From positions 186,001-250,000 of IMG/VR virus record IMGVR_UViG_3300023199_000204: a stretch of 64,000 nucleotides of DNA; one strand, given 5' to 3'. Below the pieces are notes generated by a model. The model was given only the letters and a program-made list of their open reading frames with translations. It had not been told where the DNA came from and did not search any database. Made by a program: the position numbers and the translations under genes. Positions 325 to 25,959 of this stretch are shown one piece after another; positions within the stretch are counted from its first letter, which is position 1, and every line of letters starts with the position of its first letter.

Positions 325-331
325 AATAAAT

Positions 332-413
332 GCTGGGATGGCGTAAATGGTAGCCGCGACGGACTTAAAATCCGTTGTCTTCGGGCGTGGGGGTTCGAAT
401 CCCCCTCCCAGTA
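332..413 (+). tRNA. tRNA-Leu (anticodon UAA), class II with long variable arm; CCA not encoded
   Basis: Acceptor GCTGGGA/TCCCAGT, D loop with GG, anticodon stem ACGGA-CTTAAAA-TCCGT, variable arm GTCTTCGGGC, T arm GGGGG-TTCGAAT-CCCCC, discriminator A followed by AAA. Confidence 0.92.
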
Positions 414-8654: not shown

Positions 8655-9029
8655 ATGAATTACGAAAAATATGAAGTAAGAATTTATTCCAATGGAGACA
8701 AATTTTGGTATAAAGAAGGAAAGCTTCATCGGACCAATGGTCCAGCAGTAGAATGTAGTAATGGAGATAAATTTTGGTATCAAGAGGGAAAGCTCCATCG
8801 GGCCGATGGTCCAGCAGTAGAATATGCTAATGGAGATAAATATTGGTATAAAGAAGGAAAGCGTTATCGGACCGATGGTCCAGCAGTAGAATATGCTAAT
8901 GGAGTTAAAGAGTGGTATATAGAAGGGAAAGCATATACTGAGAAAGAGTTCAACGAACTCTTGAAGAACGATTGTAATGGAAAGACCGTCGAAATCGACG
9001 GGAAAAAATATAAGTTGGTTCTACAATAA
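8655..9029 (+). CDS. MORN-variant-like 23-aa repeat protein, paralog 1 (3 units)
   Basis: Units of type KEGKLHRTDGPAVEYANGDKYWY. N- and C-termini shared with 16003 and 25509. Start placed at ATG8655 after agga. Confidence 0.85.
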   Translation: MNYEKYEVRIYSNGDKFWYKEGKLHRTNGPAVECSNGDKFWYQEGKLHRADGPAVEYANGDKYWYKEGKRYRTDGPAVEYANGVKEWYIEGKAYTEKEFNELLKNDCNGKTVEIDGKKYKLVLQ

Positions 9030-10457
9030 TATTCTTTGGAGAAAAAATGAGCAGAAATATAACTCGTCCTTGGGGAAGCAAAAGAGCTAATCCTAAAAAG
9101 TTTGAATATCAAGAAAGAGCCTCAAATCGTTTAGTTTCACTCCTAGAAAATAATTCAAAGAGAGCTAAAAATAATATTTCTTCAAAAGAATTAGTAAAAA
9201 AACTATGGAAAAAAACCGATGATTTGTATCACGAACAATCATATTACGAAGCCAATTTGAAACTAGCGAGAATGAAAGTAAAGTCCGAACCTAATCGGAA
9301 AAATTACTGGTCTAATGAGATTCTAAAATCAAAAAATAGAATTCACGATGTAAATCTTAAAATAGGAGTTATTAAAAATAAAAGAGCAGAAGCAAGAAAT
9401 GAAATGCTTTTTACAAGAATGGAAGAAATAAAATTTCTAATCAATAGAGTTAAAAGTAATCTTTATCCTTAGGAAATTAAAATGAAATATATATTGATGG
9501 TAGTGAGTATTGTTTTGTTTTCTGGTTGTGGTGAATATCCAGAAAGATGTTTTAAGTGCTTTGCTGATCCGGGAATTTGGAAAATCACCCATAAACTAAA
9601 AGCCACATCTTGTGGTCCTGATTTTCGCGACCATCCTTTGAAAGAAGTAAATACTCTTGAAGGGATAAAATGCGGCGTGTCGTGGCTTCAATACTCAACA
9701 TTTAAAACTCACCCTTTTTCAAATTATACCACTTATTGTGGAGGTTGGATTAATTATGGTCACGAAAAAATAACAGGTGAGGGTGTGTGTGCGTTGTATG
9801 ATGATATAAATGAAAAATATAGATGTAATTATAGAACAAAAATGATTTTTGAAAGGGTAGATTAAAATGGATATTGAAATTGATGTTAGTGAATGGCAAC
9901 CAAGTGAAGCCGAATCAGTCTATAAAGTCCTTGCTTTAATTAACTTTTTTATTGATGCGGGTTATAAGGGAAAACTCCTTAAACTTGCTGAAATGGCGTC
10001 CGCTTGGAGTGAGGAATGGAGAGGAAAGATTGCCGAAAAGAGTGAGGATGAGCAAATCTTTGGTAAGCTAATGCTCAATGTTGCCAAAAATAAACTGCTT
10101 TTTATAAAATCTTTGGATGAACTTCTAACTGAAGTGAATAAGAGTATTATTCTTCTTACTAATAAAAATACGAGTAGTAAAGTTATTAATCCTTTTAGAG
10201 GTTCGGAAAAAATAACTAGAAGGATGAAATGAAATTAAAAATAAATGAATGGTTTTTTAAAAATGAAGAAATAATATTAGAAATTCCTGGTTTAAAACCA
10301 ATTAAACTTGATGAGATTTGCTTTAATTGTAATAGTGAGTGGCTTGAGGAACAAGTAGAAACAGAAAATTGTCCATTGTGTAATAAAGTTGGTTACCGAA
10401 TTACTGATGCTGGAAAGGCAATACTCGGATTAATTATTAGATATGGTGAAACCTATT

Positions 10458-10988
10458 ATGAAAATAGATCATCTGACGAAACAACAGGTGATTGATAAAT
10501 TAAAAGTAATACGAGCCCAGTTTGAAGTAGCTATATATTCTAGTGAAAACTATTTCAACACTGGCTCAATATTAAGAACAGGACACGGATATTTATGTTC
10601 TAAGTTTTGGATGATAGACTTTAATAAATTTTATAAAAAAGCAACAATGGGTTGTCATAAATATGAAAATATTTCTAAAGTTTCCCTAGAAGAGTTTATA
10701 ACATTTAATAAAAATAGAAACATTATTTCTTTTGAAAGAAGACCAGAGTTAAAAACGAAAGAAATATATGACTTCACATATCCAAATAGACCAATATTGT
10801 TTTTTGGTTCGGAAAAAACTGGCGTGCCGAATGAAATACTTGATGTTTCAAAAGAAATAATTACTATTCCTATGTATGGAGTTCATAATGACTTTAATGT
10901 TGCTGTGGCAGCCAGTGTAGTTATGTATGACTTCACATCTAAAAATAGAATAGTATCATTTAAAGATTGTTATGGAAAAACAACTTGA
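10458..10988 (+). CDS. SpoU/TrmH-family RNA methyltransferase (SPOUT)
   Basis: NTGSILRT, LFFGSEKTGV and TIPMYG...FNVAVAASVVMY motifs. Confidence 0.85.
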   Translation: MKIDHLTKQQVIDKLKVIRAQFEVAIYSSENYFNTGSILRTGHGYLCSKFWMIDFNKFYKKATMGCHKYENISKVSLEEFITFNKNRNIISFERRPELKTKEIYDFTYPNRPILFFGSEKTGVPNEILDVSKEIITIPMYGVHNDFNVAVAASVVMYDFTSKNRIVSFKDCYGKTT

Positions 10989-11664
10989 TAAAATAGCACA
11001 AAGAAAATCTAAAATTATGAATAAACTTAAGAAAGTTTGGAGAATGTTGCCAAGTGATATAAGTCTATATCATTTTTTAAAAATGATCTCAAATCATATT
11101 GAGGAATTTAGCAATAAAGATTTAGAGGCAATTTTAGATGAGAATAGAATTCTTAAAGAAATTTCTAATATAGCCTTTAAAGAAATGTGTCATTCTATCG
11201 AATGGTATGAAAATAATATTAACTATCATAGTGAAAAAATTGTTCTTATCGATGGAGAATATATTTCTTGTAATAAACACAGATTTTTTATATTCAAAAA
11301 AGATAATTATAGATGCAAATGTTGTGGTTTGAAAAGAACTTATTGTTATAAGGAGCTAACTCGTAATAATAAAAAAAATTATTATAACCTTCAACTTTAT
11401 GGAATTGATGTTGAAGAAAGAATTATGATGACAATAGATCACATAATTCCTATTTCTAAAGGAGGATTTAATAGTAAAACTAATCTTCAAACACTGTGTG
11501 AAAGATGTAATTCAAATAAAGGGGCAAGGTTAATTGACTTGTCAACACTAGCAACAGAAATATATAAAAACTATATAAAATTTGAGGGATACGATGACTC
11601 TAAGATATACAAGAATCGACCAAAACAAAGATGTAATTATGCGACGCAACAAGCAAGCGTATGA
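10972..11664 (+). CDS. HNH endonuclease
   Basis: CKCCG, then TIDHIIPISKGG...NLQTLCERCNSNK. Confidence 0.85.
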   Translation: MEKQLDKIAQRKSKIMNKLKKVWRMLPSDISLYHFLKMISNHIEEFSNKDLEAILDENRILKEISNIAFKEMCHSIEWYENNINYHSEKIVLIDGEYISCNKHRFFIFKKDNYRCKCCGLKRTYCYKELTRNNKKNYYNLQLYGIDVEERIMMTIDHIIPISKGGFNSKTNLQTLCERCNSNKGARLIDLSTLATEIYKNYIKFEGYDDSKIYKNRPKQRCNYATQQASV

Positions 11665-12315
11665 AGTGGAAGTGAGAGATAATCTTAAACTAATTAACCA
11701 GTGTGTCTTTAATAAAGAAAAGAAAGCAGATGAGTTTTTTGAGACACAACTTAAAAATCTAAACTATAAGGATGTGCTATAATGTTGAACTCACATAAGT
11801 TTGAAGATGATAAGCTAATGGCTAACCTCAATAAATGGTCAGAAAATCTAGCAGTGAGGTGGATTGAAAAAACAGACAATACTGTTCCACTTACTGTTCT
11901 TATTAGGGCATCATACAAGCTTGTAGCAATCTGTGCTAGAAAGTCAAATCTATTTACAAAAGAAGTTCTTCATAAACTTCTCGATGTCGAACTGGAAAAT
12001 ATCCCTGAAGGAAAAGGAGTTCCAAGTTGAGTCCATATAGAAAAAACGCAGATAATGCTCCAGGGCCACCCGTAAGAAAACCTTGGAGTGGTATTTCAAA
12101 AGCAATAATTAAGTCTAAAAATCAGATTAAAGATGCGATTCAAAATGATAAGTCAATTATTGACTCATTGGCATCGACTAAAGATATTGCTAGTGCTACA
12201 CCAGAGAACTGGTTGGCATTAATGGCTGGAATAATTGCTATAAGTATTGGATTTTGCTTGGTTTTGACAAATGTAATATAGTATTATAGAATTTTAAAAA
12301 TAAGGATAAATAAAA

Positions 12316-12636
12316 ATGAGTAGGAAGAAAAAAGAAGAAGCTAAAAAGAGACGACGCGAAGCAAAGTTGGTGAGAAAATCTGCTAATTATTTGCGTCACG
12401 GTCCTAAAGTTGGGCACACTGGGCGCCGACAAAAGAAGGCAAAAGATAAGCAATTCAAGCCAGGTCCTGCCAAGTGGGATAAAACACCATATCCTCATTC
12501 CTTCACAAAAGGCTCTGATAAGCGTTTTCGTCCTCCGGGGTCCGCTGGTAGGAAAAAGTATCCGAAACTCCCTCTACGACCTCTGCGTAAGCGTAGGCAT
12601 CTAAGTTCTTCTCCGACAGACCACGGACACATCTAA
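12316..12636 (+). CDS. Highly basic Lys/Arg/Pro-rich small protein
   Basis: Composition dominated by K, R and P. Locally higher GC with CGN Arg codons. Confidence 0.6.
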   Translation: MSRKKKEEAKKRRREAKLVRKSANYLRHGPKVGHTGRRQKKAKDKQFKPGPAKWDKTPYPHSFTKGSDKRFRPPGSAGRKKYPKLPLRPLRKRRHLSSSPTDHGHI

Positions 12637-12670
12637 AACAAATAATTTTTTAATCCCCCATTTATTTAGG

Positions 12671-12710
12671 GGCTTATAATTATGTAATAAAACTTACATA
12701 ATTATAAGCC
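12671..12710. other. Perfect 17-bp inverted repeat
   Basis: ggcttataattatgtaa-taaaac-ttacataattataagcc in the intergenic gap. Confidence 0.85.
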
Positions 12711-12731
12711 TTCAAATAATAAGGAGAAAGA

Positions 12732-13304
12732 ATGCGTGAATTTGATAGAAAATTTTCTCTTCATCATTTAAGAACTTTTGATAAAGAGCTATTAAGATCC
12801 ATTACTTACATTAAAGGAATTTATATAGCAGGAGGAGCCGCTCTTGCTATGTTTGATAACAAACCAAAAAATATAGTTGATTGGGACATATATACTGAAA
12901 ATTGGAGTGGATTAATGGAAGTTCAAGAAACTCTCAATAGACTTGGGTTTAAAGCTCTTCCAAATAAAGTTGATGATATTATGAACTTTGATAAGAAAGG
13001 AACAAAGGTTCAAGTAATATCAAAATTTATGGCTCCGATGGAAGGTTTATTTAACTATTTTGATCTTTCTATTTGTTGTGTAGGATATAAAGAAGATAAA
13101 TTTTATGTTTCTAGAAATGTTCATAGAGATATAAGAAAAAAAAAATTTAATTTTATTTCAACAACTTCTCCTAAAACTGTAAAAAAAAGAGTTAAAAAAT
13201 ATATTAATAGAGGATACAAGCCAAGCAAAACCTTTTGGAAAGATTTTGAATGGTACTTGAATACTAGAAGGTTTAAAATAGAACAAAGAGGGGAGTTCTA
13301 CTAA
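12732..13304 (+). CDS. Pol-beta-fold nucleotidyltransferase (polyA polymerase/CCA head-like)
   Basis: YIAGGAA...VDWDIY (GG plus DxD) and a downstream FDLSIC motif. Confidence 0.6.
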   Translation: MREFDRKFSLHHLRTFDKELLRSITYIKGIYIAGGAALAMFDNKPKNIVDWDIYTENWSGLMEVQETLNRLGFKALPNKVDDIMNFDKKGTKVQVISKFMAPMEGLFNYFDLSICCVGYKEDKFYVSRNVHRDIRKKKFNFISTTSPKTVKKRVKKYINRGYKPSKTFWKDFEWYLNTRRFKIEQRGEFY

Positions 13305-14268
13305 ATGATTAAAAATATATATTCATTTATTTTTGGGTCAGCTATTGGCTCAACTATCTATTATATTTTAACAAAAAATATTTATGTATCTATAATAGGG
13401 TTTTCTATAGTATCTATAATTGGAATACTTATTTATTCTATGGAGAATAAAGATGAAGTTCCCTAATGCCGATATGGTCTGGAAGAATCATATACTAATT
13501 TCGAGCTTTGAGCAACTAAATAAAGAGCTAATGAGATTTAGTAAAAAATTATGTGAAGAAAACTTTAGAAAATTTCCAAGAGAGTATGGAAAAGCACAAG
13601 GTTATTCTTGTTCTGCTTTTGAAATAAAATCACTTTTAGAAAATATAGAGGAAATATTTAAAAATGATTCCTAAAATTGGTGATAAGGTAAAAATAACTC
13701 CTGATGGGTGGAGAGAAATTAAAAACTGGGTCCCATTTGACAGTATAAATAATATTGATAGAAGGGTAGTTTATACAATTATTAATATAAAAAAACATTA
13801 TTCAAGAATTAAGTTTAATATTAAAGATCTATCGGGAAAATTTGTTCACTTTGAACGGACCATACCTACTTCTCAATTTGGTGTGTTTATGAGTGGCAAA
13901 GTTCCAGTAATATTATTTAAGCCGGTAAACAAAATGAATAATAATTCAGAAGTAAAAAATTGTTTAATGTGTGGTTCTCCTGTACATCTTGGATTTAATC
14001 TTTTTCACTGTAGTAATATTGATTGTGTAAACTATGATGAAAATTTTTATGATAGTTCAGATTACGAAGGCGGTGAAAAACCACATGAGTTTGTATTTTA
14101 ATTATGAAGTATAATCAAAGACTTATATGGTTTATACTTGATAATTCGATTAAAAATGGAAAGATAAAAGGATATCTTGAAAAAATGTATCTTCGTGATC
14201 AGCTTGAATATAAATCAACCGAAGAACTCGAAGAAATGGCACAAGAATTTAATAGAGGGCAACAACAC

Positions 14269-14310
14269 ACGCGTGCGTGAATTTTGTTTTTTTTGTCTCG
14301 ACGATTTTAC
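14269..14310. repeat. Dispersed 42-nt motif, copy 1
   Basis: acgcgtgcgtgaattttgttttttttgtctcgacgattttac, near-identical to 22609 and 41958. Its TGA is the stop of small ORF 14104..14280. Confidence 0.9.
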
Positions 14311-14622
14311 ACTCCAAAAAATGAGGACGGACTTTTCACCTTTTTAAAAGGAGGTTATTATGAATACCAAAAGTATTTTAATAGAAATTATTAATGAGAT
14401 TAATATTCAATTATCAAGTCTTTCTAATTTAAAAAATATATATGAAGCAACATCTCAAAAAGAAGAAGTTAAGAAAATTTCTTATACTATTCAAGAGTTA
14501 AATTTAACAAGGAATAATATATATAAAAAACTTCAATCTATTTATGATCTTGAAGATGTTCTTAACATAAAGATGTGGCAAAAACTAAATCCTAATAGAG
14601 CACAGGCATAAGGGAGAATAAA

Positions 14623-15060
14623 ATGAATAATGAATCAAAATCTTCATTTGAGGGAAGCACTTTTGCTAATAATAATGTTTTGGCAAAAACATTTCGCAAA
14701 ATGCTTAACACTCTTAACGATTACGAATTGAATCTAATTCTAAAAGAAGCTCACGATATAGAAAAAATAAGAATTCAAAGGAAGATTAATAAGGGAAGCT
14801 ACGAGCTTTTGAGCGGAGATGAACTAGAACTCCTTTCAAAAGGTAGGATTTGGGAATCGATAAGAAGATACAAAAATAGAACCAAATGTAATAAGAAATT
14901 CGCAAGAGAAGTAATTAATTTTCATAGTTCAATAGAACGAAAGATTGTTTCAGAATCAGTTTCTGAAGTTCTAAAAGAAGATTATGTAGCCAAGCCTTTG
15001 AAAAACTTCAAGAGAGTATATGATGTTGATCTTGAAGGTCCTCAGCTTCCAACAAGTTAA
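14623..15060 (+). CDS. Hypothetical protein, possibly with a ribosomal L7/L12 C-terminal-like helical motif
   Basis: GRIWESIRRYKNRTKCNKKFAREVI loosely resembles the KIxAIKxYRxxTGxxLxEAK pattern. Confidence 0.25.
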   Translation: MNNESKSSFEGSTFANNNVLAKTFRKMLNTLNDYELNLILKEAHDIEKIRIQRKINKGSYELLSGDELELLSKGRIWESIRRYKNRTKCNKKFAREVINFHSSIERKIVSESVSEVLKEDYVAKPLKNFKRVYDVDLEGPQLPTS

Positions 15061-15372
15061 ATGGGAATATTTTTAATTGGCATTGCTGTAGCAGCAATAT
15101 CTTTAACAGTAACCAGATCAGATTTATTTCGTCCATTTAGAAATGATGTTCGTAATGTTAAATTTTTAGGCAAAGTTTTAACTTGTCCTTATTGTTTTTC
15201 ACATTGGATGGCGGCGATACTATCAATATTTTATCAGCCAGAACTTAAAACATATGTGATAATAGAATGGTTTATAGGATTGTTTTGTATAGTAGCAATA
15301 TCAGTTCCAATTATGGCTTTAATAAATTTTTCATTGAACTTTATTCCACCAGAAACTGAGGAAAATTTGTGA
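15061..15372 (+). CDS. DUF1360-like membrane protein
   Basis: Hydrophobic helices with LTCPYCFSHW. Confidence 0.55.
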   Translation: MGIFLIGIAVAAISLTVTRSDLFRPFRNDVRNVKFLGKVLTCPYCFSHWMAAILSIFYQPELKTYVIIEWFIGLFCIVAISVPIMALINFSLNFIPPETEENL

Positions 15373-16002
15373 AACAATATATTTCTCAAATAAAAACGGT
15401 AATAGAAGATATATTTGAAAGTAATAATGAAAATTATATTAACAATACCCTTGGAACTGGTGCGTATTATTATCTGTCGGATGTATCTAACTTAGTTGAA
15501 GGTCTAGAAGAGGAAGCAGATATAGCTGAACTTAAAATAAAACTTTTCAATAATGAAAAAGAAATTTTTCTTCCTTAAAGAAAGTTAGATAAACGTTATA
15601 TATTAGAAGAGGCAATGAGGAATATTTATAGTATTGTAGAAGAGTGTTCTTATAGACTAATTAAAAGAGGGTGAATAGTGTCTTACTCGACATTTCCATA
15701 TTATATTTTTGGAACAGATAAATATTTAGATGAGTATAAGGTAGGAAAAGTACAATTATAAGGAAATATTGAGCACAAAGTTATAAGTCAGTTTTTGTAG
15801 AATTTATATTTAAACCAGAAGAATTTATTAATTACCTTTTCCTTGGTTTTAAAATAAATAAAAAAAGATATAATCATTATTTAAAAAAGGATTTGAAGAT
15901 GTAAATTCACTTTTAAACAAAAAGGATCTTTGCAAAAATTTAAAAAAGATTAGAAAGCTTTTTAAAAAGATAAAAATTATATATTAATTATTAGGAAAAA
16001 AA

Positions 16003-16653
16003 ATGAACTATGAAAGATATGAAGTAAAAGTATATTCTAATGGAACTAAATATTGGTATAAAGAGGGAAAGCTTCATCGGACCGATGGTCCAGCAATAGA
16101 ATATGCCAATGGAGAGAAACATTGGTATAAAGAGGGAAGTCTTCATCGGACCGATGGTCCAGCAGTAGAATATACTAATGGAAATAAAAAATGGTATCAA
16201 GATGGAAAGCTTCATCGGACCGATGGTCCAGCACTAGAGTATACTGATGGAAATAAAAAATGGTATCAAGATGGAAAGCTTCATCGGACCGATGGTCCAG
16301 CAGTAGAGTATACTGATGGAGAAAAACATTGGTATAAAGATGGAAAGCTTCATCGGACCGATGGTCCAGCAATAGAATATGCTAATGGAACTAAATATTG
16401 GTATCAAGAGGGAAAGCTTCATCGGACCGATGGTCCAGCAGTAGAATATACTAATGGAACTAAAAAATGGTATAAAGATGGAAAGCTTCATCGGACCGAT
16501 GGTCCAGCAAAAGAATATGTTAATGGAGATAAGTTTTGGTATATAAAAGGAAAAGAATATACTGAGAAAGAGTTCAATGAACTCTTGAAAAATGATTGTA
16601 ATGGAAAGACCGTCGAAATCGACGGAAAGAAATACAAACTAATACTTCAGTAA
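16003..16653 (+). CDS. MORN-variant-like 23-aa repeat protein, paralog 2 (7 units)
   Basis: Seven LHRTDGPA units at an exact 69-nt period. Confidence 0.9.
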   Translation: MNYERYEVKVYSNGTKYWYKEGKLHRTDGPAIEYANGEKHWYKEGSLHRTDGPAVEYTNGNKKWYQDGKLHRTDGPALEYTDGNKKWYQDGKLHRTDGPAVEYTDGEKHWYKDGKLHRTDGPAIEYANGTKYWYQEGKLHRTDGPAVEYTNGTKKWYKDGKLHRTDGPAKEYVNGDKFWYIKGKEYTEKEFNELLKNDCNGKTVEIDGKKYKLILQ

Positions 16654-17015
16654 AATAATAATTTGGATAAAATAATGAATGAATATAACTTCTATGTAAA
16701 GATTACGGTTAGAGAACGAGATTTTAGATCAGCATACAGATATATTGCTGAAAGACTTAAGCATTCTAGATTTGAAACACAATCGACTTTCTCTGAAGAT
16801 AAGAAGATTGATGAAACGATTGTAGATGATGTTATTGACAATTGTATGATTTTCGGAGTACCGAATGAGACTTAATTGTTGTGTCTGTGGTGGGCTCGAA
16901 ATAATTTTATTTTTAATTTTTGTCCCCATATATAAAAAGCTTAAAAATAGGCACAAAAAACACCACGAAAAGTGTGAAGACTGTTCTTGTTCTCGCAAAA
17001 TAGAGGAGATAAATA

Positions 17016-17439: not shown

Positions 17440-18102
17440 AGGATTTAAAATGGATAAGTTTGAGTTGGCAGAGTCAATAAAAAAACTGTATGATAAAGAA
17501 GACTTTGATGTCCAAGAAGCATATGTTATTGCCGACTTGGCAGCAGATCTTGCCGATTTAATTCTTAAAGAAAAAAGTGAAAAAGATGATGACCAAACGA
17601 ACTAGAACGATAAATGTTTCTGCTCATAAATTAGAAGATATTTTTGATATATGTGAAGAGCCTTCGTATCTTCTTGGAAGAATTTGCGGAAGTGAAGAGA
17701 AAAATATTCCTTTGTCCACTATTCTAAATTCATCAGGACTTAATAAAGAATATTTTAATTTATTTACAAATATTACTAATATAAACTTCTCTTTTAAAGA
17801 GATTTGTTTAAAAACGGACTGTATGTGGGACGAAGTATATTATAATCTTAAAAATGAACAAACAATTCTTGAGATTACAGAAGAGCATTTATTTAATATG
17901 TTTAAAAAACATTATTCAAAAAAAGTTGTTGTTGTGGAGTTAATTGATGTTTTAAACAACAATGAAATAGTAGAAGTTTGTAATTACGTTGGATGTAATA
18001 AGGAAAAAGAATACGAACTTGAAAAAAAAATAGAGAAAATGTCTTGGAAAAGAATAGCAAAATTTGCTATGGATGTGCTTCAACTTAAACTTGGAAAGAA
18101 GA

Positions 18103-18513
18103 ATGAATAGAAATGAAAGGCTTCTTATGAGAGCCTTTAATAAAAGTATAGAATCAAATCATCCAATATTTCCTATGGGAGCAATTCTTGCTCAGGGAAA
18201 TAGAATAATCTCTTATGGAACCAACAAGCACGGCTGTACTCATCCAAAACAAAAGGTGAGAACAAATAGCCTTGGAATGGAATATGGAAGGCATTTTCCT
18301 CACGCAGAACTAATATGTTTACTCGCCGCTCCAAAGAATAAGAGAATAGGATCAACAATCTATGTTGCTCGCAGATTAAATAAGGGAGGAACTGGAATGG
18401 CAAAGCCTTGTCAACATTGTCATACCTACCTTCTTAACGAAGGTGTCAAAAAAGTAGTTTATACGGTTAAATCAGAAGACTTCACTAATTGGTATAATGA
18501 TTATTACCTCTGA
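18103..18513 (+). CDS. Zn-dependent cytidine/dCMP deaminase-fold protein
   Basis: HAE (HAELICL) and PCxxC (KPCQHC) motifs. Confidence 0.8.
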   Translation: MNRNERLLMRAFNKSIESNHPIFPMGAILAQGNRIISYGTNKHGCTHPKQKVRTNSLGMEYGRHFPHAELICLLAAPKNKRIGSTIYVARRLNKGGTGMAKPCQHCHTYLLNEGVKKVVYTVKSEDFTNWYNDYYL

Positions 18514-19651
18514 GGAAAAAATGTGGGAATTAAAAAACGGTAGAACTAAGCTTAATATATCTAAAATAAGAAAAACTTTTAAAGTAATAGAAGACGATGA
18601 CTTAAAATTAATTATTCCACAAAAAAATATGTGGGATTGGGAAGACGAAGAGAAATTTCTTCGCTCAATTATAGTGGATAAGAATGGTTATGTAGTTTCT
18701 TCTGGTTGGCCCAAATTTGGAAACTATGGTGAATTTATTCAAGATACAGAGGTTTTAAATAATGCTCTTCAAAATGATGATAAAATAAATTTTACTATGA
18801 AAGAGGACGGAAGTCTTTGTATTAGATCAGTAATTAATGACAAAGTAGTTCTTAGAACTCGTGGTACAATGTATGGGGGAGACTATGACGAGGAAGGAAA
18901 TCCCCCTTTTAGGGTAAAGTTTACTCAAGTTGCCGAGACGAAGTATCCTAAAATATTAGATCCAAATTGGATGAAAGACAGGTCTTTATTATTTGAATAT
19001 GTCTCTCCAGAAAATAGAATAGTTGTAGGATATTCAAAAGAAGATTTAGTTTTTATTGGATCGATTAGACACTCTGACTTAAAAATAGGTTCTTGGAATG
19101 AGCTTCAAAAAATAGCGGAAGAGGGAAAGCTTAACCTAGTTAAACTTCATAACCTTCCGCTAGAAGTGTCTGAGCTTCTTGAAAAAATTAAAAATTGGGA
19201 AGATGAAGGAATTGTCGCCAGAGTTAATAATGGAGAAGTTCTTGTTAAAATTAAAAGTGCTTCCTATTTGGCAAGGCATAGGTTAAAATCAAATCTTAAT
19301 TATAAATTTATATGTGAGTTTATTGAAATGTCTTTACCAAAAAACAAAGATGATTTAGAAAATCAGCTTTGTCAAATGGGAATGGATTTTGAAACAGTTT
19401 CAGAAGCAATTAAAATATATGATTTATATTGTCAAGCAGAAAATGAAACCCAAGAGGCTTTAAATGAAGCAATAAAACTATATGAATCGTTTTCATCTAA
19501 AGAAACAGATCCAAGATTGATTAGAAAAGACTACGCTATGATTGCTACCAAAGCTCCGTTTCCAACAAGAACATTTATGTTTTTACTTTATGATAATAAA
19601 CAACAGAAACTTAAAGATTTTTACAAAAAAGTCGTTTGGACTAAGCATTAG
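18497..19651 (+). CDS. T4 Rnl1-like RNA ligase
   Basis: PKFGN, motif I KEDGSL, FEYVSPENRIV, EGIV and KIKS motifs. Confidence 0.8.
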   Translation: MIITSEEKMWELKNGRTKLNISKIRKTFKVIEDDDLKLIIPQKNMWDWEDEEKFLRSIIVDKNGYVVSSGWPKFGNYGEFIQDTEVLNNALQNDDKINFTMKEDGSLCIRSVINDKVVLRTRGTMYGGDYDEEGNPPFRVKFTQVAETKYPKILDPNWMKDRSLLFEYVSPENRIVVGYSKEDLVFIGSIRHSDLKIGSWNELQKIAEEGKLNLVKLHNLPLEVSELLEKIKNWEDEGIVARVNNGEVLVKIKSASYLARHRLKSNLNYKFICEFIEMSLPKNKDDLENQLCQMGMDFETVSEAIKIYDLYCQAENETQEALNEAIKLYESFSSKETDPRLIRKDYAMIATKAPFPTRTFMFLLYDNKQQKLKDFYKKVVWTKH

Positions 19652-20200
19652 TGAATTATGTATAGCAAATATAATAAAATAAAAAAGAAATTAAATAGAC
19701 TAGAAACTAGGCAAAAGAAATTAATTAAACTTTTGTTTATTAAAAACTCTATGACAAGAGACCAGTTGAGAAGCAAAATGAATGAGTTGATGTGACAATG
19801 TCTAATATAAAAAAACACAACATAAACTTAATATAAATAATATTATTAATGAGTTTAGAGACCCAGAAAGTAGACTTATTATAAGAAAATTTCTTAAATT
19901 AATAAGCTAGCCAGAAATTAGGTTTAAGTTAGTAGAAGAAGCTAAAAACATAACAGATAAATTATTCAATTCTCCTTCAAATAAGGAAAGGCTTGATGGT
20001 AATAAAGCTAAAGAGTTAGAAGAGGTGATAGAAGGACTTTGTTTATTTTATCAAAGATATATAGAAAACATTAATATTCCAAACCCGATGATAGGAAGAT
20101 GAGATACATTCATTATAAAATATTAGGAAGCCCTTATCATCTAAGAAAAGTAATAAAGAAATAGAAAAAAAATCTTTGTTTTTTTTAAAGGATATGAAAT

Positions 20201-20623
20201 ATGGATTGTAGAGATTTTGCTAATCTTTCCAACAAATGGTATGAAAGAATTACTGATGATGAGAAATATGTAATCATTAATCTTTATTGGGAAGATGAAG
20301 AAGATTCTTACGAAGAAGAAGTAAAAGTTCCGATTAAATATGAAGTTTGTAATACCTGTAATGGAAAGGGAACGCACGTTAATCCATCAATAGATGCCCA
20401 CGGAATATCTTCAGAAGAATTTAATGATGATCCAGGCTTCGCTGAAGATTATTTTAGTGGAGTTTATAATGTTTCGTGTTATGAGTGTAAAGGTAAAAGA
20501 GTAGTTCCTGAAATAAATGAGGAATTTTGTAATGATGAGCTACTTGATAGAGTTAGAGAGCATCAAAAAGTCATTTATGAAATGAATTATGAAAGAGCAA
20601 GAGAAATTAAATACGGATACTAA
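20201..20623 (+). CDS. DnaJ-type CxxCxGxG zinc-finger protein
   Basis: CNTCNGKG and CYECKGKR. Confidence 0.6.
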   Translation: MDCRDFANLSNKWYERITDDEKYVIINLYWEDEEDSYEEEVKVPIKYEVCNTCNGKGTHVNPSIDAHGISSEEFNDDPGFAEDYFSGVYNVSCYECKGKRVVPEINEEFCNDELLDRVREHQKVIYEMNYERAREIKYGY

Positions 20624-22608
20624 ATAAGTAGGAGCTTAAAATGAATAAACCCTTTGAAAATTTTTGTAAAAAACATTTTGTCAGCAGTAATGGTAGTGTC
20701 CAGAAACTTAGTTCTAATAATAAAGAAGCAAAAGAAAGAAAAAAAAAGATCGCTATTAAAAAGGTTAGAAGTTCTGAAAGAAAACTAATTGCCGCTCTTA
20801 AAAGAAAAGAATTAGAGCTACTTAAAATAAACAAAAAAGAAAGTAAAGAAGAATATGAATCTATCTTTAATAATATTAAAGAAATAAATCAAAAACTAAA
20901 TAATGTAAGAAAACAACTAACAACGATGTATTTAAATAAAAATAAAGTATGAAATATTATACAGACATTGATATAATAAGAGGTGAGTTTGAATATTCAG
21001 TAGATGTAGAAATTAATCTTTATAAAGACTATGCCAAAATAGTTAATTCAAAAATTTCTTGTTATTTATATGATGGAGAAGAAATAACTGATTTTATTGG
21101 ACCACCAGAAAGGGAACAAGTTCCTATAAATGCTTGGATAAAGCTTAATAATTATGAAGAAGAAAGAGTGATTGAAGAGGCATTAAATGAATTATGTTAA
21201 GTTATTGTTGTTAAGTTTATTTATATTTTCTTGTGGAGGCATAAGAACTCCAATGGATAAATATTGTAAGAGAGAGTGTTTATCTATTTATGATGAAGTT
21301 GAAACAGCTTATTGGTTAGGTAATGATAACATTTTAAATAAAACTAGATGTGGATGTGTTGTAAATGGCAAAGAAGAAACAGAGTTCTTACCCCAAAGAA
21401 AACCTAATAACTGAAAGCTGGTTATTAAATGAACTTACTTCATATGAAGCTGAGATAATAAATCTTTTAGAGCCTCCAAGGAATCATATAGATTCCAAGG
21501 ATCCGTATGACAAAGCAAAGTCTCAAAGACTTCTTGCTATGAGAAGCATACATTTAAAGGCTAGATTTCCCAATGGCAGAGTATTTTGGGCACAGGCTGG
21601 GACAGTATGTAACTCAACACCTAAAGATAGTGTAGAAGAGTTTGAGTCAATTGAAGTGGCTTATATGGAAGAAGGAGAGCCCAAACCATTAAAAAAACTA
21701 ATTGATGTCGGCTTAGGAGAGAAAAAGAAATCATTAATTAAAAACTGTAATAAAAAAAACTTAGAAGCAATGTTAATGATAATCGCTTCCTTAAAAAAGA
21801 AAAAGAAAAAAGAGAAATGGTGATGTTTTTTGTTCTATCAGAAAACAAAAATATAATTATTGTGGAAGCTCTTTTTAAGAAAAAAGAAAAAGCAGAAGAG
21901 TATAGAAATTTAATGAATAATATGTATCCATCAATTAATCATTGGGTAGAAGATTTTAAAGGAGATGAGAATGAACAATCGTAATGAAGCTAATCAGGCA
22001 TTAAAAGAAATGGAAGAAAGCACTAAGAAAGGAAATAGTGCTTCAGGTCGCTTAAATAAAATTGGTGATAAAAGTTTAGCAGAAAAGGTAAAAAAAGTTT
22101 CAAACGATATGGATGAGTGTGTTAAAGAAATTAAAAGGAAACTTAATAAAGACAATAATTAAATATGACAAAAGAAGAAATTGAAATTATAATAAAAAAC
22201 TTCATTAAAGATGAAGATCTACAAAAAATAATTTTAAAATACATATCAAATTGCAAAAACAAAGAAAAAATTAAAGATTGTGTATCTAGTAATATTAACA
22301 ATCTTATTTCAACATTAATCAGTTTAACACTTGCTATTATTATGGAGAATGAAGAATGTCTAGAGGAAATCACAGAACAAGAGCAAGATTTAAAGAAAGA
22401 AAAGAACAAAGAAGGAAGGAAGCTTTAAAGAGACAAGAATGTAGAGATAAATTAACTCCAGAGCAACAACTAGATAGGCTTAATTCTTTGCTTGGCGAAG
22501 GAATTGGTGCTCAAAAAGAAAGGGACAAGTTGCGTAGAAAGATAGAAGAAAACAAAGAATAACATTCGTTTTATATAAGGTGTTGAGATTTAAGGAAGTA
22601 TCCAACGT

Positions 22609-22650
22609 ACGCGTGCGTGAGTTTTGATTTTTTTGTCTCGACGATTTTAC
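22609..22650. repeat. Dispersed 42-nt motif, copy 2
   Basis: acgcgtgcgtgagttttgatttttttgtctcgacgattttac, with 2 mismatches to copy 1. Confidence 0.9.
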
Positions 22651-23264
22651 TTTTCGATGAAAATTAGGGAGGTGAACTAGATTATTAAATAATGGGATTA
22701 AAAGGGAGAAATAGTTCTAAGTTTTATTAATTAATTTAAAGGAGAAAGAAATGGAAGAAACTCAAACTAATACTAATACCGATACTGAAAACAAAAAGAA
22801 AACGGACCCCGCTGTCCAGCGACTTCGTAAGATCTCTCGTTGCGTTCAGACTTTGCTTCAGGTTGAAGGTGAAGAAATTACCTCAAAACAAGTAATGGAG
22901 CTTCTAGCTGATAAAGATCTAAGCGATAATGTAGACCCTGTTGCTTTGAAGGAAGAGGTTAAGGCTCAGATTCCTAATCTACCTCAACCGGCTCAGATCT
23001 CAACTAGTAGCGAGCGTCGTGAAGCCCTTGAAACCTATATGTCATCTCATTGGGACGATGTAAAGGATAACGAGGTTGTTAGATCAGCTCTATTTAATGC
23101 TTATTGTCAGGGTCGCTACTCGAAGGAGCATCGGGAAGGAATGAAATCTGAGCTGCTTGCTCGCCTCAATGGTGATGCTCCTGACAGCTCAACAGTTAGT
23201 TCAGGTGATGACACATCTGATGCCCCTAGTGATGGAAAAGATCTAGACTTTTAATCCTAATTTA

Positions 23265-23369
23265 GACATACAGTGATTGCCCTCCCTTCCACTGTATGTC
23301 GGACCTCAGAAGCTTTTTTGGTGAAGCCCAGTCTCTGGAGCAAGAGGGGTTCAAATCCCCTCCTGAGGC
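23265..23369 (+). ncRNA. 11-bp hairpin followed by a tRNA-like element lacking a normal anticodon arm
   Basis: gacatacagtg/cactgtatgtc hairpin, then acceptor-like cctcag/ctgagg, D arm gctt-ttttggtg-aagc and T arm agggg-ttcaaat-cccct. The anticodon region folds only as ccag-tct-ctgg. Confidence 0.5.
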
Positions 23370-23390
23370 TTATAGAAGAAAGGAATATAA

Positions 23391-23906
23391 ATGAATAGGT
23401 ACTTTATTGATACGGAGTTTATTGAAAGTGGAAAATGTATTGAACCACTAAGTATTTGCCTTATTAAAGAAAATAAAAAAACAGGGAAGGTTGAAGATAA
23501 ATATTACGCAATAAATATTGATTGCGATATATCTATCACAAACGACTGGGTAAAAGAAAATGTTTTAAAACATCTTCCAAAAGTATCTTCTCCATTATAT
23601 AAAAGTAAAGAAAAAATAGCTGGAGATTTAATTAGCTTTACAAAAGAAGATAATTTATTTGAGATGTGGGGATGGTTTCCTACATATGACTGGGTAGTTA
23701 TAAAAAATATATTCGGTAGCATATATTCTTTACCTAATAATTTTCCAAATAAAATATATTGTTTAAGACAGTGGCTATATCATTTAGGATTAAGATTTAA
23801 TATTCTTCCAAAAAAAGATAAATCAAAAGTTCATAGTGCTGAGTATGATGCTGAATGGGCACGAAGAACATTTAGAATTCTTAATAAAATAGAAGGAACT
23901 AAATGA
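23391..23906 (+). CDS. DEDDh 3'-5' exonuclease (RNase AS-like)
   Basis: FIDTEFIE, YDWV and HSAEYDA motifs. Confidence 0.8.
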   Translation: MNRYFIDTEFIESGKCIEPLSICLIKENKKTGKVEDKYYAINIDCDISITNDWVKENVLKHLPKVSSPLYKSKEKIAGDLISFTKEDNLFEMWGWFPTYDWVVIKNIFGSIYSLPNNFPNKIYCLRQWLYHLGLRFNILPKKDKSKVHSAEYDAEWARRTFRILNKIEGTK

Positions 23907-24051
23907 TAGTATTATTTATAATATTAGGCATAATCTTTGGATTTATTTTAAAAAAACTTCTAATTTATTTTGAATTTAAAGAAGATATATCTTTTTATGT
24001 TTCTGTCTTTGGTTCTATAATATTAACTTATTTTCTTTTAAGGAGATTGAT

Positions 24052-24438
24052 GTGAAAAAATTAGGATGGACATTACTTGTTCTAGTAATGCTTGTAGGGT
24101 TTGGTTTTAGTGTGTATCTTTACAATGTTGAAAAAGAATATGTTGGTACTGTTGTTGATAAAGCAATTAAAAGAGTAGGTAATAAAGATCAATATATGAT
24201 ATATGTTAAACTTAAAAATGGAAAATCAATAGTGTTCAAAAATGTAGATTCATCTGTCTTAAGGGTATGGGATTGGAAATTTAATTCTTCAGATCTATAC
24301 GCTTTAATCTTAAAAGGTAGAACCTATAAGTTTAGAGTTTATGGTCTCAGATCAACTGCCTGTTCTTGTTATGAAAATATAGTAGATGTTAAAAAAGGTC
24401 CAATATATGTCAAAAATTTTAAGATTAGAGGATTATAA
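24052..24438 (+). CDS. DUF1523-like membrane-anchored OB-fold protein
   Basis: N-terminal TM helix, then KNVDS...WKFNSSDLYA...YG.R...YENI. Confidence 0.6.
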   Translation: MKKLGWTLLVLVMLVGFGFSVYLYNVEKEYVGTVVDKAIKRVGNKDQYMIYVKLKNGKSIVFKNVDSSVLRVWDWKFNSSDLYALILKGRTYKFRVYGLRSTACSCYENIVDVKKGPIYVKNFKIRGL

Positions 24439-24617
24439 TTCTTCTATGAGATATGTAGATTTTGTTAGAGAATCAGGACTGGCGGTTTGGAGAATTCACT
24501 CAACTTTATGGTTGTGTTTAGTAATCTCCCAAGGGAAGCCTGTTTGGTTTACATCTAATCTTAAAGTATCAACTATTATTGATAGGAAAAATGCTACCAA
24601 GTATTTTAAATTAAGAA

Positions 24618-25481
24618 ATGTCTATAAGAACAAAGCCAATAAAGAACTTAATTGATCCAAGCACAGCAAATAGAATTGTTAATCAAATTATATATGAAGA
24701 AGTTGTAAGATATAATTTAGAATATAAAAAATATCTTTCTGGGAAAAGAAAGAAACCATTGAGTTGGGCATCTAATGCGTCCAATAGATTAAAAGATTAT
24801 AATATTGAACTATCTCATACAACTTTAAATAGTTATAAGAAAGCAATTTCTAATGGAAAAAGAGATGCTACTTCTGCTGCCAGTTTTGGTGGGAAAACTA
24901 TTTCGTCTCGATATGGAAAAGATAGAATGTATGGTCAGTTTGATATGTTAATAAATTTAAATCTAAAAAATACGCGATTAAAATATGTTGGGTTGCCTGC
25001 TAATCAGATAATATCTGTTGTTAATAAATATAAAAATGTAATTGCTTGTGATAAAGATGCTAGCATGTATGCTTTTATGCAAAACCAATTAGATGTATTT
25101 AAACCCAATGGAAAAGTAATAGTATATTTAGATGATGTTTTAGAATTTTTAGAAGAAACAAATAACAAGTTTTCTATTTTTGATTTAGATTTAATGTGCT
25201 TTTTGGATGACGAAAACTTTATTAGAAGGATAGCTAGAGCCGTTGCTAGGTCTTCATTAAAAAGCTCAGTAGTTTGTATAGCGAGCTGTATAGGCAGGAA
25301 GGCGAATTTTACAGAATTTTCTTATAGGAAGTTAATGCCAAAGGTTTTTTTAAAAGAACTGGCTAAGAGTAATTTTATAGTATCGACACAATACTCTGGT
25401 GGATATACAGATAAAATTATACCTATGAGATATGAATTATTTGTTTTAAATAAAATATCGGACGCCGTTCTTTGTTCATAA
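24618..25481 (+). CDS. Possible class I SAM-dependent methyltransferase-like protein
   Basis: C-terminal half has Rossmann-like spacing: YVGLPA, IACDKD, DDVLEFL, IFDLDLM. Confidence 0.3.
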   Translation: MSIRTKPIKNLIDPSTANRIVNQIIYEEVVRYNLEYKKYLSGKRKKPLSWASNASNRLKDYNIELSHTTLNSYKKAISNGKRDATSAASFGGKTISSRYGKDRMYGQFDMLINLNLKNTRLKYVGLPANQIISVVNKYKNVIACDKDASMYAFMQNQLDVFKPNGKVIVYLDDVLEFLEETNNKFSIFDLDLMCFLDDENFIRRIARAVARSSLKSSVVCIASCIGRKANFTEFSYRKLMPKVFLKELAKSNFIVSTQYSGGYTDKIIPMRYELFVLNKISDAVLCS

Positions 25482-25508
25482 TATTTAATTTTAAATGGTA
25501 GGCTAAAA

Positions 25509-25958
25509 ATGAATTACGAAAAATATGAAGTAAGAGTATATACTGATGGAGATAAATATTGGTATAAAGAGGGAAAGCTTCATCGGACCGATGGTCCAGC
25601 AATAGAATATGCCAATGGAGAGAAACATTGGTATAAAGAGGGAAGTCTTCATCGGACCGATGGTCCAGCAGTAGAATATATTAATGGAAATAAAAAATGG
25701 TATAAAGAGGGAAGGCTTCATCGGACCGATGGTCCAGCAATAGAATATGCTGATGGAACTAAAGAGTGGTATAAAGAGGGAAAGCTTCATCGGACCGATG
25801 GTCCAGCAATAGAATATTCTGATGGAGATAAAGAATGGTATATAAAAGGGAAAATATATACTGAGAAAGATTTCAACGACCTCTTGAAAGATAATTGTAA
25901 TGGAAAGACCGTCGAAATTGACGGAAAGAAGTACAAGCTTATTCTTATGGAAGATTAA
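25509..25958 (+). CDS. MORN-variant-like 23-aa repeat protein, paralog 3 (4 units)
   Basis: Four LHRTDGPA units. Units 1-2 are almost identical in DNA to units 1-2 of paralog 2. Confidence 0.9.
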   Translation: MNYEKYEVRVYTDGDKYWYKEGKLHRTDGPAIEYANGEKHWYKEGSLHRTDGPAVEYINGNKKWYKEGRLHRTDGPAIEYADGTKEWYKEGKLHRTDGPAIEYSDGDKEWYIKGKIYTEKDFNDLLKDNCNGKTVEIDGKKYKLILMED

Positions 25959-25959
25959 A

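What the first reader, a model, noticed from the sequence alone, without database searches (positions are those of the whole stretch)
8655..25958. Three modular repeat genes (3, 7 and 4 units) with a frozen palindromic DNA core and variable flanking codons
Seen: the paralogs share N- and C-caps and differ by whole 69-nt units. Twelve of 14 units carry the identical 20-mer atcggaccgatggtccagca. It uses CGG and ACC codons that are rare here, and it holds two overlapping inverted repeats (atcgg-a-ccgat and ggacc-gat-ggtcc). The codons between cores vary non-synonymously (I/V/L/K, A/T/S/V/I, N/D, E/N/T/D/V, H/K/Y/F/E). Units 1-2 of 16003 and 25509 are near-identical, implying recent exchange. The C-cap also has ccgtcga-aa-tcgacgg. 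Inference: a recombination-shuffled repertoire of binding surfaces, possibly anti-defence or host-protein binders, with the core acting as a crossover point. Some variation is A-centred, as in DGRs, but no reverse transcriptase is in this window. The repeat family itself is common in large viruses.
Basis: partly seen in the sequence, partly recalled or inferred. Interest (0 to 1): 0.68.

Follow-up and report, generated by a model that had tools for sequence, protein, structure and literature searches.

The report
Homogenised MORN-like repeat genes in phage
A huge tailed phage carries nine small genes built from 23-residue MORN-like beta-hairpin repeats; gene conversion keeps their DNA almost identical except at a few surface codons, which is a tidy example of a known kind of repeat evolution and not a new diversity-generating machine.

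Summary
Three genes (window 8655-9029, 16003-16653, 25509-25958) have 3, 7 and 4 units of 69 nt. Twelve of the 14 units carry the identical 20-mer. The 316-kb contig holds nine such genes and 29 exact cores.

The contig is a contractile-tailed huge phage. The proteins fold as MORN-type beta-hairpin repeats (AlphaFold pLDDT 88; best PDB match MORN1, E 2e-8).

The freeze is real. Synonymous diversity is 0 in the core, 0.07 at other conserved codons and 0.24 at seven variable codons. In the unique N- and C-caps of the same genes it is 0.24-0.43.

The freeze is private to this genome. Homologues elsewhere keep HRxDGPA as protein but use free codons, and the 20-mer is absent from 2.9 million viral contigs. 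Exact tracts of 100-128 nt are shared between paralogs, one of them a whole unit out of register, which shows gene conversion.

The best reading is concerted evolution of a binder family whose hairpin-tip residues stay diverse. The palindromes are most likely a by-product. DGR-like adenine mutagenesis is not supported, and no reverse transcriptase lies in the contig. Function is inferred only. Reads could not be examined.

The parts
8655..9029 (+). Paralog with 3 units (124 aa from the ATG shared with the other paralogs; an upstream in-frame ATG lies at 8601). Its cores carry the only two core variants: Asp to Asn and Thr to Ala.
8694..8900 (+). Array of 3 x 69 nt. Cores (20-mer) at 8728, 8797 and 8866.
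16003..16653 (+). Paralog with 7 units (216 aa). This protein was folded as a MORN-type repeat.
16042..16524 (+). Array of 7 x 69 nt. Exact cores every 69 nt from 16076 to 16509. Units 3 and 4 differ by 1 nt.
25509..25958 (+). Paralog with 4 units (149 aa). It shares a 128-nt exact tract with the gene at 16003 and a 100-nt tract with the contig-end paralog. Its 3' end overlaps the next ORF (HD domain, 25900-26487).
25548..25823 (+). Array of 4 x 69 nt. Exact cores at 25582, 25651, 25720 and 25789.
16525..16653 (+). C-cap: a last half-repeat (WYIKGKEY), a predicted helix (TEKEFNELLKND) and a beta-hairpin (CNGKTVEIDGKKYKL). The equivalent caps lie at 8901-9029 and 25824-25958. Synonymous diversity among the 7 paralogs is 0.36-0.43.
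16610..16625 (.). C-cap palindrome CCGTCGA-AA-TCGACGG, also at 8986-9001 and imperfect at 25909-25924. It encodes T-V-E-I-D-G, scores as terminator-like on the minus strand, and is perfect in 4 of 7 paralogs.

Best explanation
These are members of a nine-gene family, seven of which share the same N- and C-caps. The family encodes small MORN-like (DUF6745-type) beta-hairpin repeat proteins in a contractile-tailed huge phage.

The repeat arrays evolve in concert. Unequal recombination and gene conversion among about 30 near-identical 69-nt units, within genes and between genes up to 180 kb apart, keep wiping out differences. The scaffold codons, including the rare CGG and ACC, are therefore identical everywhere, while the single-copy caps have drifted apart.

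Diversity survives at about seven codons. These lie in the strand-turn-strand segment between two cores, the tip of one hairpin. Either selection keeps different binding surfaces there, or those positions are simply free to vary.

Unit number (1, 3, 3, 3, 3, 7, 4) changes by the same misaligned exchange.

The palindromic look of the core follows from the one ancestral codon choice that was amplified. It may help template switching, but nothing here requires that.

The proteins most likely act as modular protein-binding adaptors or inhibitors, as other MORN sheets do.

Shown: the fold, the family, the freeze, the mosaic tracts, and the privacy of the core to this genome. Inferred: selection for diversity, the binding role, and any role of the palindrome.
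For: Fold:
- AlphaFold2 mean pLDDT 87.9, pTM 0.77.
- Foldseek top hits are MORN1 of Toxoplasma, Trypanosoma and Plasmodium (E 2e-8 to 4e-6), junctophilins, MORN4/Myo3a and radial-spoke MORN proteins.
- Pfam DUF6745 scores above its cut-off for two of the three proteins.
- More than 6,700 homologues were found.

Phage: Baseplate_J, tail sheath, all genes on one strand.

Family: nine genes and no diverged extra copies. Homology between paralogs ends within about 10 nt of the ORFs.

Concerted evolution:
- Cap synonymous diversity (pS) is 0.24 to 0.43 with pN/pS 0.13-0.28. Unit pS is 0.084 between genes and 0.075 within genes. Core pS is 0 over 1,422 site-pairs.
- The core holds 42% of the unit's synonymous sites and none of the 7 distinct synonymous changes, p about 0.024.
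- Position -1 is free in the family (2.86 bits over 694 units) but fixed as Thr in 27 of 28 units here.

Exchange:
- Exact tracts of 124 nt (one unit out of register), 128, 109 and 100 nt.
- Identical 48-nt inter-core cassettes shared by three gene pairs.
- Each unit's nearest neighbour is often in another gene.

Core is private to this genome:
- Relatives use CAT/CAC, AGA/CGA/CGT/CGC, GGA/GGT/GGC, CCT/CCA/CCC and GCA/GCT/GCG for the same residues.
- The 20-mer is absent from viral contigs. The only three metagenome hits are in unrelated reading frames of contigs with 64-74% GC.
Against: - Selection for diversity is not demonstrated. Omega at the variable codons is about 1.0-1.3 and not significantly above 1, so relaxed constraint fits as well.
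- Conversion of whole units should also erase the variable codons. Frozen single codons, such as GGA at -14, lie between hypervariable ones. This needs either very fine-scale exchange plus selection, or codon-local mutation.
- Synonymous changes cluster in the same codons as the non-synonymous ones, which simple conversion does not predict.
- Only 0.24% of usage-weighted synonymous codings of HRTDGPA contain two inverted repeats, so the palindrome is nominally unusual.
- No RecA, RecT or ERF recombinase was found in the contig, but the contig is a fragment.
- There are no population data.
- There is no functional evidence at all.
Confidence: 0.68

Rival explanations
1. The frozen palindromic core is itself a functional DNA element. 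It would be a programmed recombination or template-switch site, or the target of a phage nuclease such as the nearby HNH enzyme. It would drive shuffling of the 48-nt inter-core cassettes and make the family an RT-independent diversity generator.
For: - Zero synonymous change in the core against 7 elsewhere in the unit.
- A palindromic coding is rare among synonymous codings: 1.5% have one inverted repeat and 0.24% have two.
- Inter-core cassettes are shared between genes.
- Linkage is strong within cassettes and weak across the core.
- CGGWCCG occurs 29 times in the family and once elsewhere in the genome.
- An HNH endonuclease gene lies at 10972-11664.
Against: - The element is absent from every relative examined and from 2.9 million viral contigs.
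- The freeze extends well outside the palindrome, to GGA, AAG and CTT.
- Hairpin energies are not significant, z -1.0 to -1.7.
- The linkage test has low power and its data are not independent.
- The palindrome statistic is post hoc and concerns one ancestral event.
- No recombinase or site-specific enzyme is linked to the genes.
Confidence: 0.12
2. Plain recent amplification. One unit was duplicated in tandem and the genes were then copied around the genome. The variable codons are simply the unconstrained positions drifting neutrally, with no ongoing exchange and no selection for diversity.
For: - Omega is about 1 at the variable codons.
- The variable positions are a subset of the family's free positions.
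- All codon variants are connected by single-nucleotide steps.
Against: - The caps of the same genes have pS 0.24-0.43, so the genes are old relative to the arrays.
- Units within a gene are no more alike than units in different genes: pS 0.075 against 0.084.
- The out-of-register 124-nt exact tract and the other 100-128-nt tracts require exchange.
- Other family-free positions (-1, +6, -8) have not drifted.
Confidence: 0.12
3. Targeted mutagenesis of the variable codons, either a DGR with its reverse transcriptase and template outside the contig or another codon-local mutator.
For: - Synonymous and non-synonymous changes fall in the same seven codons.
- Variable columns are spread evenly over codon positions 1, 2 and 3.
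- The contig is a fragment.
Against: - No RVT_1 match in 316 kb.
- Variable columns are not enriched for consensus A (Fisher p = 0.29), and 16 A columns are invariant or singleton, including AAA between two variable codons.
- There is no template-repeat / variable-repeat pair. The variation is spread over about 30 units in nine genes, unlike a single C-terminal variable repeat.
- Identical cassettes are shared between genes, which fits copying and not fresh mutation.
Confidence: 0.04
4. Assembly artefact: the unit order, the unit number or the mosaic tracts were created by misassembly of short reads across repeats.
For: - The contig ends inside a family member.
- Exact tracts of up to 128 nt approach typical read and k-mer lengths.
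- Repeats are a known cause of fragmented viral assemblies (PMC9238414).
Against: - Eight paralogs are traversed with unique flanks on both sides.
- Adjacent units differ at several sites, so they are distinguishable.
- All reading frames are intact.
- The codon freeze cannot be produced by misassembly.
Confidence: 0.04

Closest known systems
MORN repeat proteins (MORN1 of apicomplexans and trypanosomes, junctophilins, MORN4, radial-spoke RSP1/RSP10; Pfam MORN and MORN_2)
   Same: - The period is 23 residues.
- Each repeat is a beta-hairpin, and the hairpins stack into a long single sheet.
- These are the best structural matches.
- Solved complexes in the hit list (MORN4/Myo3a 6jle; junctophilin-2 with a CaV1.1 peptide 7rxq) show that such sheets bind proteins.
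   Different: - The sequence signature is G-x-K-x-W-Y-x-x-G-K-L-H-R-x-D-G-P-A, not YxGxWxxGKxHGxG.
- MORN_2 scores only 18 bits against a cut-off of 29.6.
- The host is a phage, and the proteins are tiny (78-216 aa) with their own caps.
Pfam DUF6745 (PF20530) and the metagenomic HRxDGPA repeat proteins
   Same: - Two of the three proteins score above the gathering cut-off (64.8 and 45.6 bits against 27).
- Most of the more than 6,700 homologues carry the same Pfam label.
- Some share the C-cap motif C-x-GK-x-VE-I/V-DG-x-x-Y-K/R-L.
   Different: - Only profile positions 63-79 of 206 are matched, repeatedly, so these proteins hold the repeat part and not the whole domain.
- Homologues show ordinary codon variation between units.
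- No paper in the library mentions the family.
YwqK-family immunity proteins (MORN_2 repeats) of LXG polymorphic toxins
   Same: These are small repeat-only proteins that neutralise a partner protein by binding it. YwqJ/YwqK is a toxin-antitoxin pair (PMC8321402, PMC6562991, listed). That YwqK is built of MORN_2 repeats is from my own knowledge. This is a plausible functional analogy for a phage inhibitor.
   Different: - No NCBIfam match to the YwqK family at E <= 0.01.
- No toxin gene is adjacent.
TAL effector repeats and other concertedly evolving repeat arrays (from established knowledge)
   Same: Units are nearly identical at the DNA level, with variation confined to a few codons. Unit number changes and units are swapped by recombination.
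   Different: There is no sequence or fold relation, no evidence for a one-repeat-one-ligand code, and seven variable codons per unit instead of two.
Diversity-generating retroelements
   Same: Variation is focused on a few codons of a binding protein in a phage.
   Different: No reverse transcriptase, no template repeat and no adenine specificity.

Membership tests
MORN repeat superfamily (structural) | Tandem units of about 23 residues | tested here: met
   69-nt / 23-aa period
MORN repeat superfamily (structural) | Each unit forms a beta-hairpin, and the hairpins make an elongated antiparallel sheet like solved MORN proteins | tested here: met
   AF2 pLDDT 87.9 with regular strand pattern. 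Foldseek 6t69 E 2e-8, probability 1.0. Nearly all of the 19 matches at E <= 1e-3 carry the MORN name (MORN1, MORN4) or are entries I know to hold MORN-repeat chains: junctophilins and radial-spoke or other axoneme complexes. TM-scores are only 0.37-0.43 because of different sheet curvature.
Pfam MORN / MORN_2 (sequence) | Score above the Pfam gathering cut-off | tested here: not met
   MORN_2 18.0 bits against 29.6 for the 7-unit protein. No hit for the other two.
Pfam DUF6745 (PF20530) | Score above the gathering cut-off | tested here: met
   64.8 and 45.6 bits against 27 for the genes at 16003 and 25509. 20.7 bits (below the cut-off) for the gene at 8655.
Pfam DUF6745 (PF20530) | Coverage of the whole 206-position domain | tested here: not met
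   The best stretches cover profile positions 63-79/80 only.
Diversity-generating retroelement target | Reverse transcriptase nearby | tested here: not met
   No RVT_1 match in the 316-kb contig, with positive controls ringing. The contig is a fragment.
Diversity-generating retroelement target | Variation at template adenines only | tested here: not met
   10 of 26 consensus-A columns are variable against 11 of 43 others, Fisher p = 0.29. The substitution spectrum includes G>A, T>G and T>C.
Diversity-generating retroelement target | Template repeat / variable repeat pair | tested here: not met
   Self-BLAST finds only the nine coding paralogs and no non-coding copy.
Concertedly evolving multigene repeat family | Repeats more alike within a genome than unique flanks of the same genes | tested here: met
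   Unit pS 0.084 (core 0) against cap pS 0.24-0.43
Concertedly evolving multigene repeat family | Mosaic tracts between paralogs | tested here: met
   Exact tracts of 100-128 nt, one shifted by 69 nt. Shared cassettes.
Concertedly evolving multigene repeat family | Homogenisation is lineage-specific (orthologous families elsewhere carry other codons) | tested here: met
Concertedly evolving multigene repeat family | Unit-number or mosaic polymorphism in the population | not testable with these tools
No near-identical contig was found in the collections.
YwqK-family antitoxin | NCBIfam match | tested here: not met
   No hit at E <= 0.01

The most novel reading that the evidence does not exclude
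The palindromic core (CATCGG-A-CCGATG overlapping GGACC-GAT-GGTCC) is a selected template-switch or nuclease-targeted recombination hotspot. It lets the phage shuffle 48-nt hairpin-tip cassettes among nine dispersed genes. That would be an RT-independent, cassette-based diversity generator for a repertoire of host-protein binders, comparable in logic to antigenic-variation systems but in a phage.
Probability: 0.1. Interest if true: 0.75.

Novelty: new member of a known kind. Interest (0 to 1): 0.36.

Why it matters
HRxDGPA / DUF6745 repeat proteins are very common in metagenomic viruses. More than 6,700 hits came from a capped candidate set, and no paper in the searched library names the family. 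Placing them in the MORN fold gives a testable idea of what they are: modular protein binders.

This genome is an unusually clean case of concerted evolution. The single-copy caps serve as an internal clock that shows the arrays are being homogenised while a handful of hairpin-tip residues stay diverse. That points experimenters to the residues likely to decide specificity.

It also shows how far exchange between dispersed paralogs can go in a huge phage. The finding does not reveal a new mechanism.

Tried and rejected
- Near relatives: megablast of 4 kb against GenBank phages found nothing. The search for related loci gave only relatives with 41-52% identity. The exact 20-mer gave no hit in viral contigs and three chance hits in high-GC bacterial contigs in other reading frames.
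- DGR: no reverse transcriptase and no adenine bias.
- Recombinase: no RecA, RecT or ERF in the contig. This is uninformative because the contig is a fragment.
- RNA structure: the whole mRNA has z = -8.3, but shuffling destroys the repeats, so this control is unfair. Single units give z -1.0 to -1.7, not significant.
- Restriction-site avoidance: GGWCC is not avoided outside the family (218 observed, about 159 expected). CGGWCCG is simply rare.
- Phage tRNA matching the rare codon: 32 tRNAs are present, including Thr(GGT) and Arg(ACG), but none for CGG.
- Positive selection: omega is 1.0-1.3 at the variable codons, not significant.
- PDB by sequence: only a periodicity match to an engineered OspA hairpin repeat.
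- PHROGs and NCBIfam gave nothing informative.
- One-face test: the structure tool returns no coordinates, so solvent exposure could not be computed.
- The large representative protein search was not used, because relatives were already abundant.

Full report
**What is there.**
They translate into proteins made almost only of a 23-residue unit, G-x-K-x-W-Y-x-x-G-K-L-H-R-T-D-G-P-A-x-E-Y-x-x, present 3, 7 and 4 times. The period is 69 nt.

The 20-mer ATCGGACCGATGGTCCAGCA occurs 12 times exactly and twice with one mismatch in the window. None occurs in 100 shuffles.

The window is bases 186001-250000 of a 316,473-nt viral contig. That contig holds 29 exact and 2 near-exact copies of the 20-mer.

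These copies lie in nine genes. Seven genes share the N-cap MNYEKYEVRVY and a C-cap ending in CNGKTVEIDGKKYKLILQ, and carry 1, 3, 3, 3, 3, 7 and 4 units. Two genes have other caps, and one of them is cut by the contig end.

A profile built from the units finds no further, more diverged copy in any of the six frames. Self-BLAST shows that similarity between paralogs stops within about 10 nt of the reading frames, so genes and not segments were copied.

**What genome this is.**
G+C is about 30%, and practically every ORF of the 316 kb is on the + strand. A Baseplate_J protein and a tail sheath make it a contractile-tailed huge phage, not a eukaryotic giant virus. It also carries 32 tRNA genes.

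The neighbours of the three genes are RNA and nucleotide enzymes: a PP-loop ATPase, an HNH endonuclease, a dCMP deaminase, an RNA ligase, an HD protein and Thg1. None of them hints at a partner.

**What the proteins are.**
Pfam gives DUF6745 above its cut-off for two of the three proteins, but only over profile positions 63-79, matched repeatedly. MORN_2 scores below its cut-off. PHROGs and NCBIfam add nothing.

The word search returns more than 6,700 relatives at E <= 1e-5 from a capped candidate set, and all of them are unnamed.

AlphaFold2 on an alignment of 32 homologues gives mean pLDDT 87.9 and a regular strand pattern per unit, followed by a helix and a small hairpin in the C-cap.

Foldseek against the PDB puts MORN1 of Toxoplasma, Trypanosoma and Plasmodium first (E 2e-8 to 4e-6). 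Junctophilins, MORN4/Myo3a and radial-spoke MORN proteins follow.

So these are MORN-type beta-hairpin repeat proteins with a divergent sequence signature.

**Is the core frozen beyond chance and beyond protein constraint?**
CGG makes up 2.6% of Arg codons and ACC 10% of Thr codons in this genome. Yet all 30 units examined use CGG, and 29 use ACC.

GGA, AAG, CTT, CAT and TAT at conserved residues outside the 20-mer are also nearly invariant.

The decisive control is internal. The single-copy caps of the same seven genes have synonymous diversity (pS) of 0.24 (N-cap) and 0.36-0.43 (C-cap), with pN/pS of 0.13-0.28. That is ordinary, fairly old paralogs under purifying selection.

| Region of the repeat unit | Synonymous diversity (pS) |
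|---|---|
| Whole units, between genes | 0.084 |
| Whole units, within genes | 0.075 |
| Seven core codons | 0 (over 1,422 site-pairs) |
| Other conserved codons | 0.066 |
| Seven variable codons | 0.24 |

I also counted distinct changes per column. The core holds 6.0 of 14.4 synonymous sites and none of the 7 synonymous changes (p about 0.024). Five of those 7 changes sit in the seven variable codons.

Against 694 units from about 119 homologues, position -1 is free in the family (2.86 bits) but is Thr in 27 of 28 units here. Positions +6, -8, -5 and -4 are also much less variable here than in the family.

The arrays are therefore homogenised at the DNA level, beyond what the protein requires.

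**Is the core a conserved DNA element?**
No. In six loci from other viral contigs, and in four further homologues fetched with their DNA, the residues H-R-x-D-G-P-A are kept. The codons vary freely between units of one gene: CAT/CAC, AGA/CGA/CGT/CGC/CGG, GAT/GAC, GGA/GGT/GGC/GGG, CCA/CCT/CCC and GCA/GCT/GCG/GCC. These hosts range from 32% to 68% G+C.

The exact 20-mer is absent from 2.9 million viral contigs. In 241 million metagenome records it occurs three times, in high-GC bacterial genes read in another frame.

The inverted repeats are real and nominally unusual. Among codon-usage-weighted synonymous codings of HRTDGPA, 1.5% have one inverted repeat and 0.24% have two. This is a post hoc statistic on a single ancestral coding.

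Folded alone, units are not more stable than shuffles, z -1.0 to -1.7. The strong z of the whole mRNA is an effect of repetition that the shuffles destroy.

GGWCC is not avoided elsewhere in the genome.

**Exchange between paralogs.**
Several gene pairs share long exact tracts:
- The genes at genome positions 170842 and 172546 share 124 nt, shifted by exactly one unit.
- The window genes at 16003 and 25509 share 128 nt.
- The genes at 170842 and 211509 share 109 nt.
- The gene at 25509 shares 100 nt with the contig-end gene, which has a different N-cap.

With a mean identity of about 87%, such tracts are not expected without conversion.

Identical 48-nt segments between two cores recur in three gene pairs. 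The nearest neighbour of many units lies in another gene or another position.

Associations between variable codons are strong inside an inter-core segment: -13 with -11, and +7 with the next unit's -13, -11 and -7 (p 0.0002 to 0.014). Across the core, no pair is below p = 0.03. This fits crossovers in the core, but the sample is small and the units are related to one another, so I rate it as suggestive.

**What kind of variation.**
Variable nucleotide columns are spread evenly over codon positions 1, 2 and 3. They are not enriched for consensus A (Fisher p = 0.29). Sixteen A columns are invariant or singleton, among them the Lys AAA between two hypervariable codons.

No RVT_1 reverse transcriptase lies in the contig. 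A DGR is therefore not supported.

Omega at the variable codons is about 1.0-1.3 and not significant. Diversifying selection is plausible but not shown.

**Where the variable residues sit (inference).**
The DSSP strings place three elements in each unit:
- +4/+5 lie in one strand.
- +7/+8/-14 lie in a turn.
- -12/-11 lie in the next strand.

If +5 pairs with -12, then +4 and the next unit's -11 are cross-strand neighbours on one face. Position -13 and Tyr +6 lie beside them, and +7/+8 sit in the adjoining turn.

On this reading the variable patch is the tip of the hairpin encoded by one inter-core cassette. The frozen core encodes the opposite strand and the DGPA loop. The linkage pattern agrees with this.

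The tool returns no coordinates, so I could not compute exposure.

**Conclusion.**
The simplest account is concerted evolution of a phage-encoded family of MORN-like binders. On that account the palindromic core is the amplified ancestral coding and not a conserved signal.

Two things stay unexplained. Synonymous and non-synonymous variation fall in the same codons, and isolated frozen codons lie between hypervariable ones. These keep a small probability for a core-driven shuffling mechanism or a codon-local mutator.

Function is unknown. By analogy with MORN4, junctophilin and YwqK-type immunity proteins (and my own knowledge), I propose protein binding, possibly inhibition of host factors.

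**Not done.**

Noticed in passing
window 54459-55946 (+): A 495-aa protein with WGR, PARP regulatory and PARP catalytic domains (E 1e-11, 1e-9, 1.5e-26). This is a eukaryote-type PARP architecture inside a tailed phage.
   Followed up: no
window 39642-41954, 57937-59538, 38311-39627 (+): A full-length Lon protease (substrate-binding, AAA, lid and S16 domains), a Cpn60/GroEL-type chaperonin and a further AAA ATPase. Together they form a proteostasis set carried by the phage.
   Followed up: no
window 7831-8475, 18064-18513, 18497-19651, 25900-26487, 26465-27412, 36518-37693 (+): A cluster of RNA and nucleotide enzymes around the repeat genes: PP-loop ATPase, dCMP deaminase, T4-type RNA ligase, HD_4 protein, Thg1 tRNA-His guanylyltransferase and an RlaP nucleotidyltransferase.
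   Followed up: no
whole contig; window 331-414: 32 tRNA genes, most of them between genome 261 and 301 kb. tRNA-Leu(taa) lies at window 331-414. There is no tRNA that reads CGG, the rare Arg codon fixed in every repeat.
   Followed up: partly
L021:5925-9134 and L021:10333-14208 (genome 125925-129134, 130333-134208): Phage homologues of PrkA kinase and SpoVR, each interrupted by intein(s) with LAGLIDADG homing-endonuclease domains. A repeat-family member (genome 134174-134581) starts inside the 3' end of the SpoVR gene.
   Followed up: no
genome 316145-316473 (contig end; L024): The contig ends inside a ninth family member that has a different N-terminus and a 12-nt internal duplication (WYKE-WYKE). 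The assembly probably broke on the repeat, and more paralogs may lie beyond.
   Followed up: partly
window 16610-16625, 8986-9001, 25909-25924: On the minus strand the C-cap palindrome scores as the best terminator-like hairpin of the region (6-bp stem, 5 G-C pairs, T-rich tail). It is perfect in 4 of 7 paralogs, and ATC/ATT synonymous variation breaks it in the others.
   Followed up: partly
genome 164005-164260; genome 23.3-24.0 kb, 93.0-93.7 kb, 100.2-100.8 kb: A short tandem array (80-90% identity between shifted copies) and a second dispersed repeat family with 72-75% identity, both outside the window.
   Followed up: no
whole contig: CheckV completeness is given as 18% for a 316-kb contig that carries tail sheath and baseplate genes. 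Either the genome is very large or the estimate is off.
   Followed up: no
L033:56-1147: A homologue from a 68% G+C contig keeps H-R-T-D-G-P-A with GC-rich codons, and its first two units are nearly identical. The family thus spans very different genomes, and partial homogenisation of neighbouring units recurs elsewhere.
   Followed up: partly
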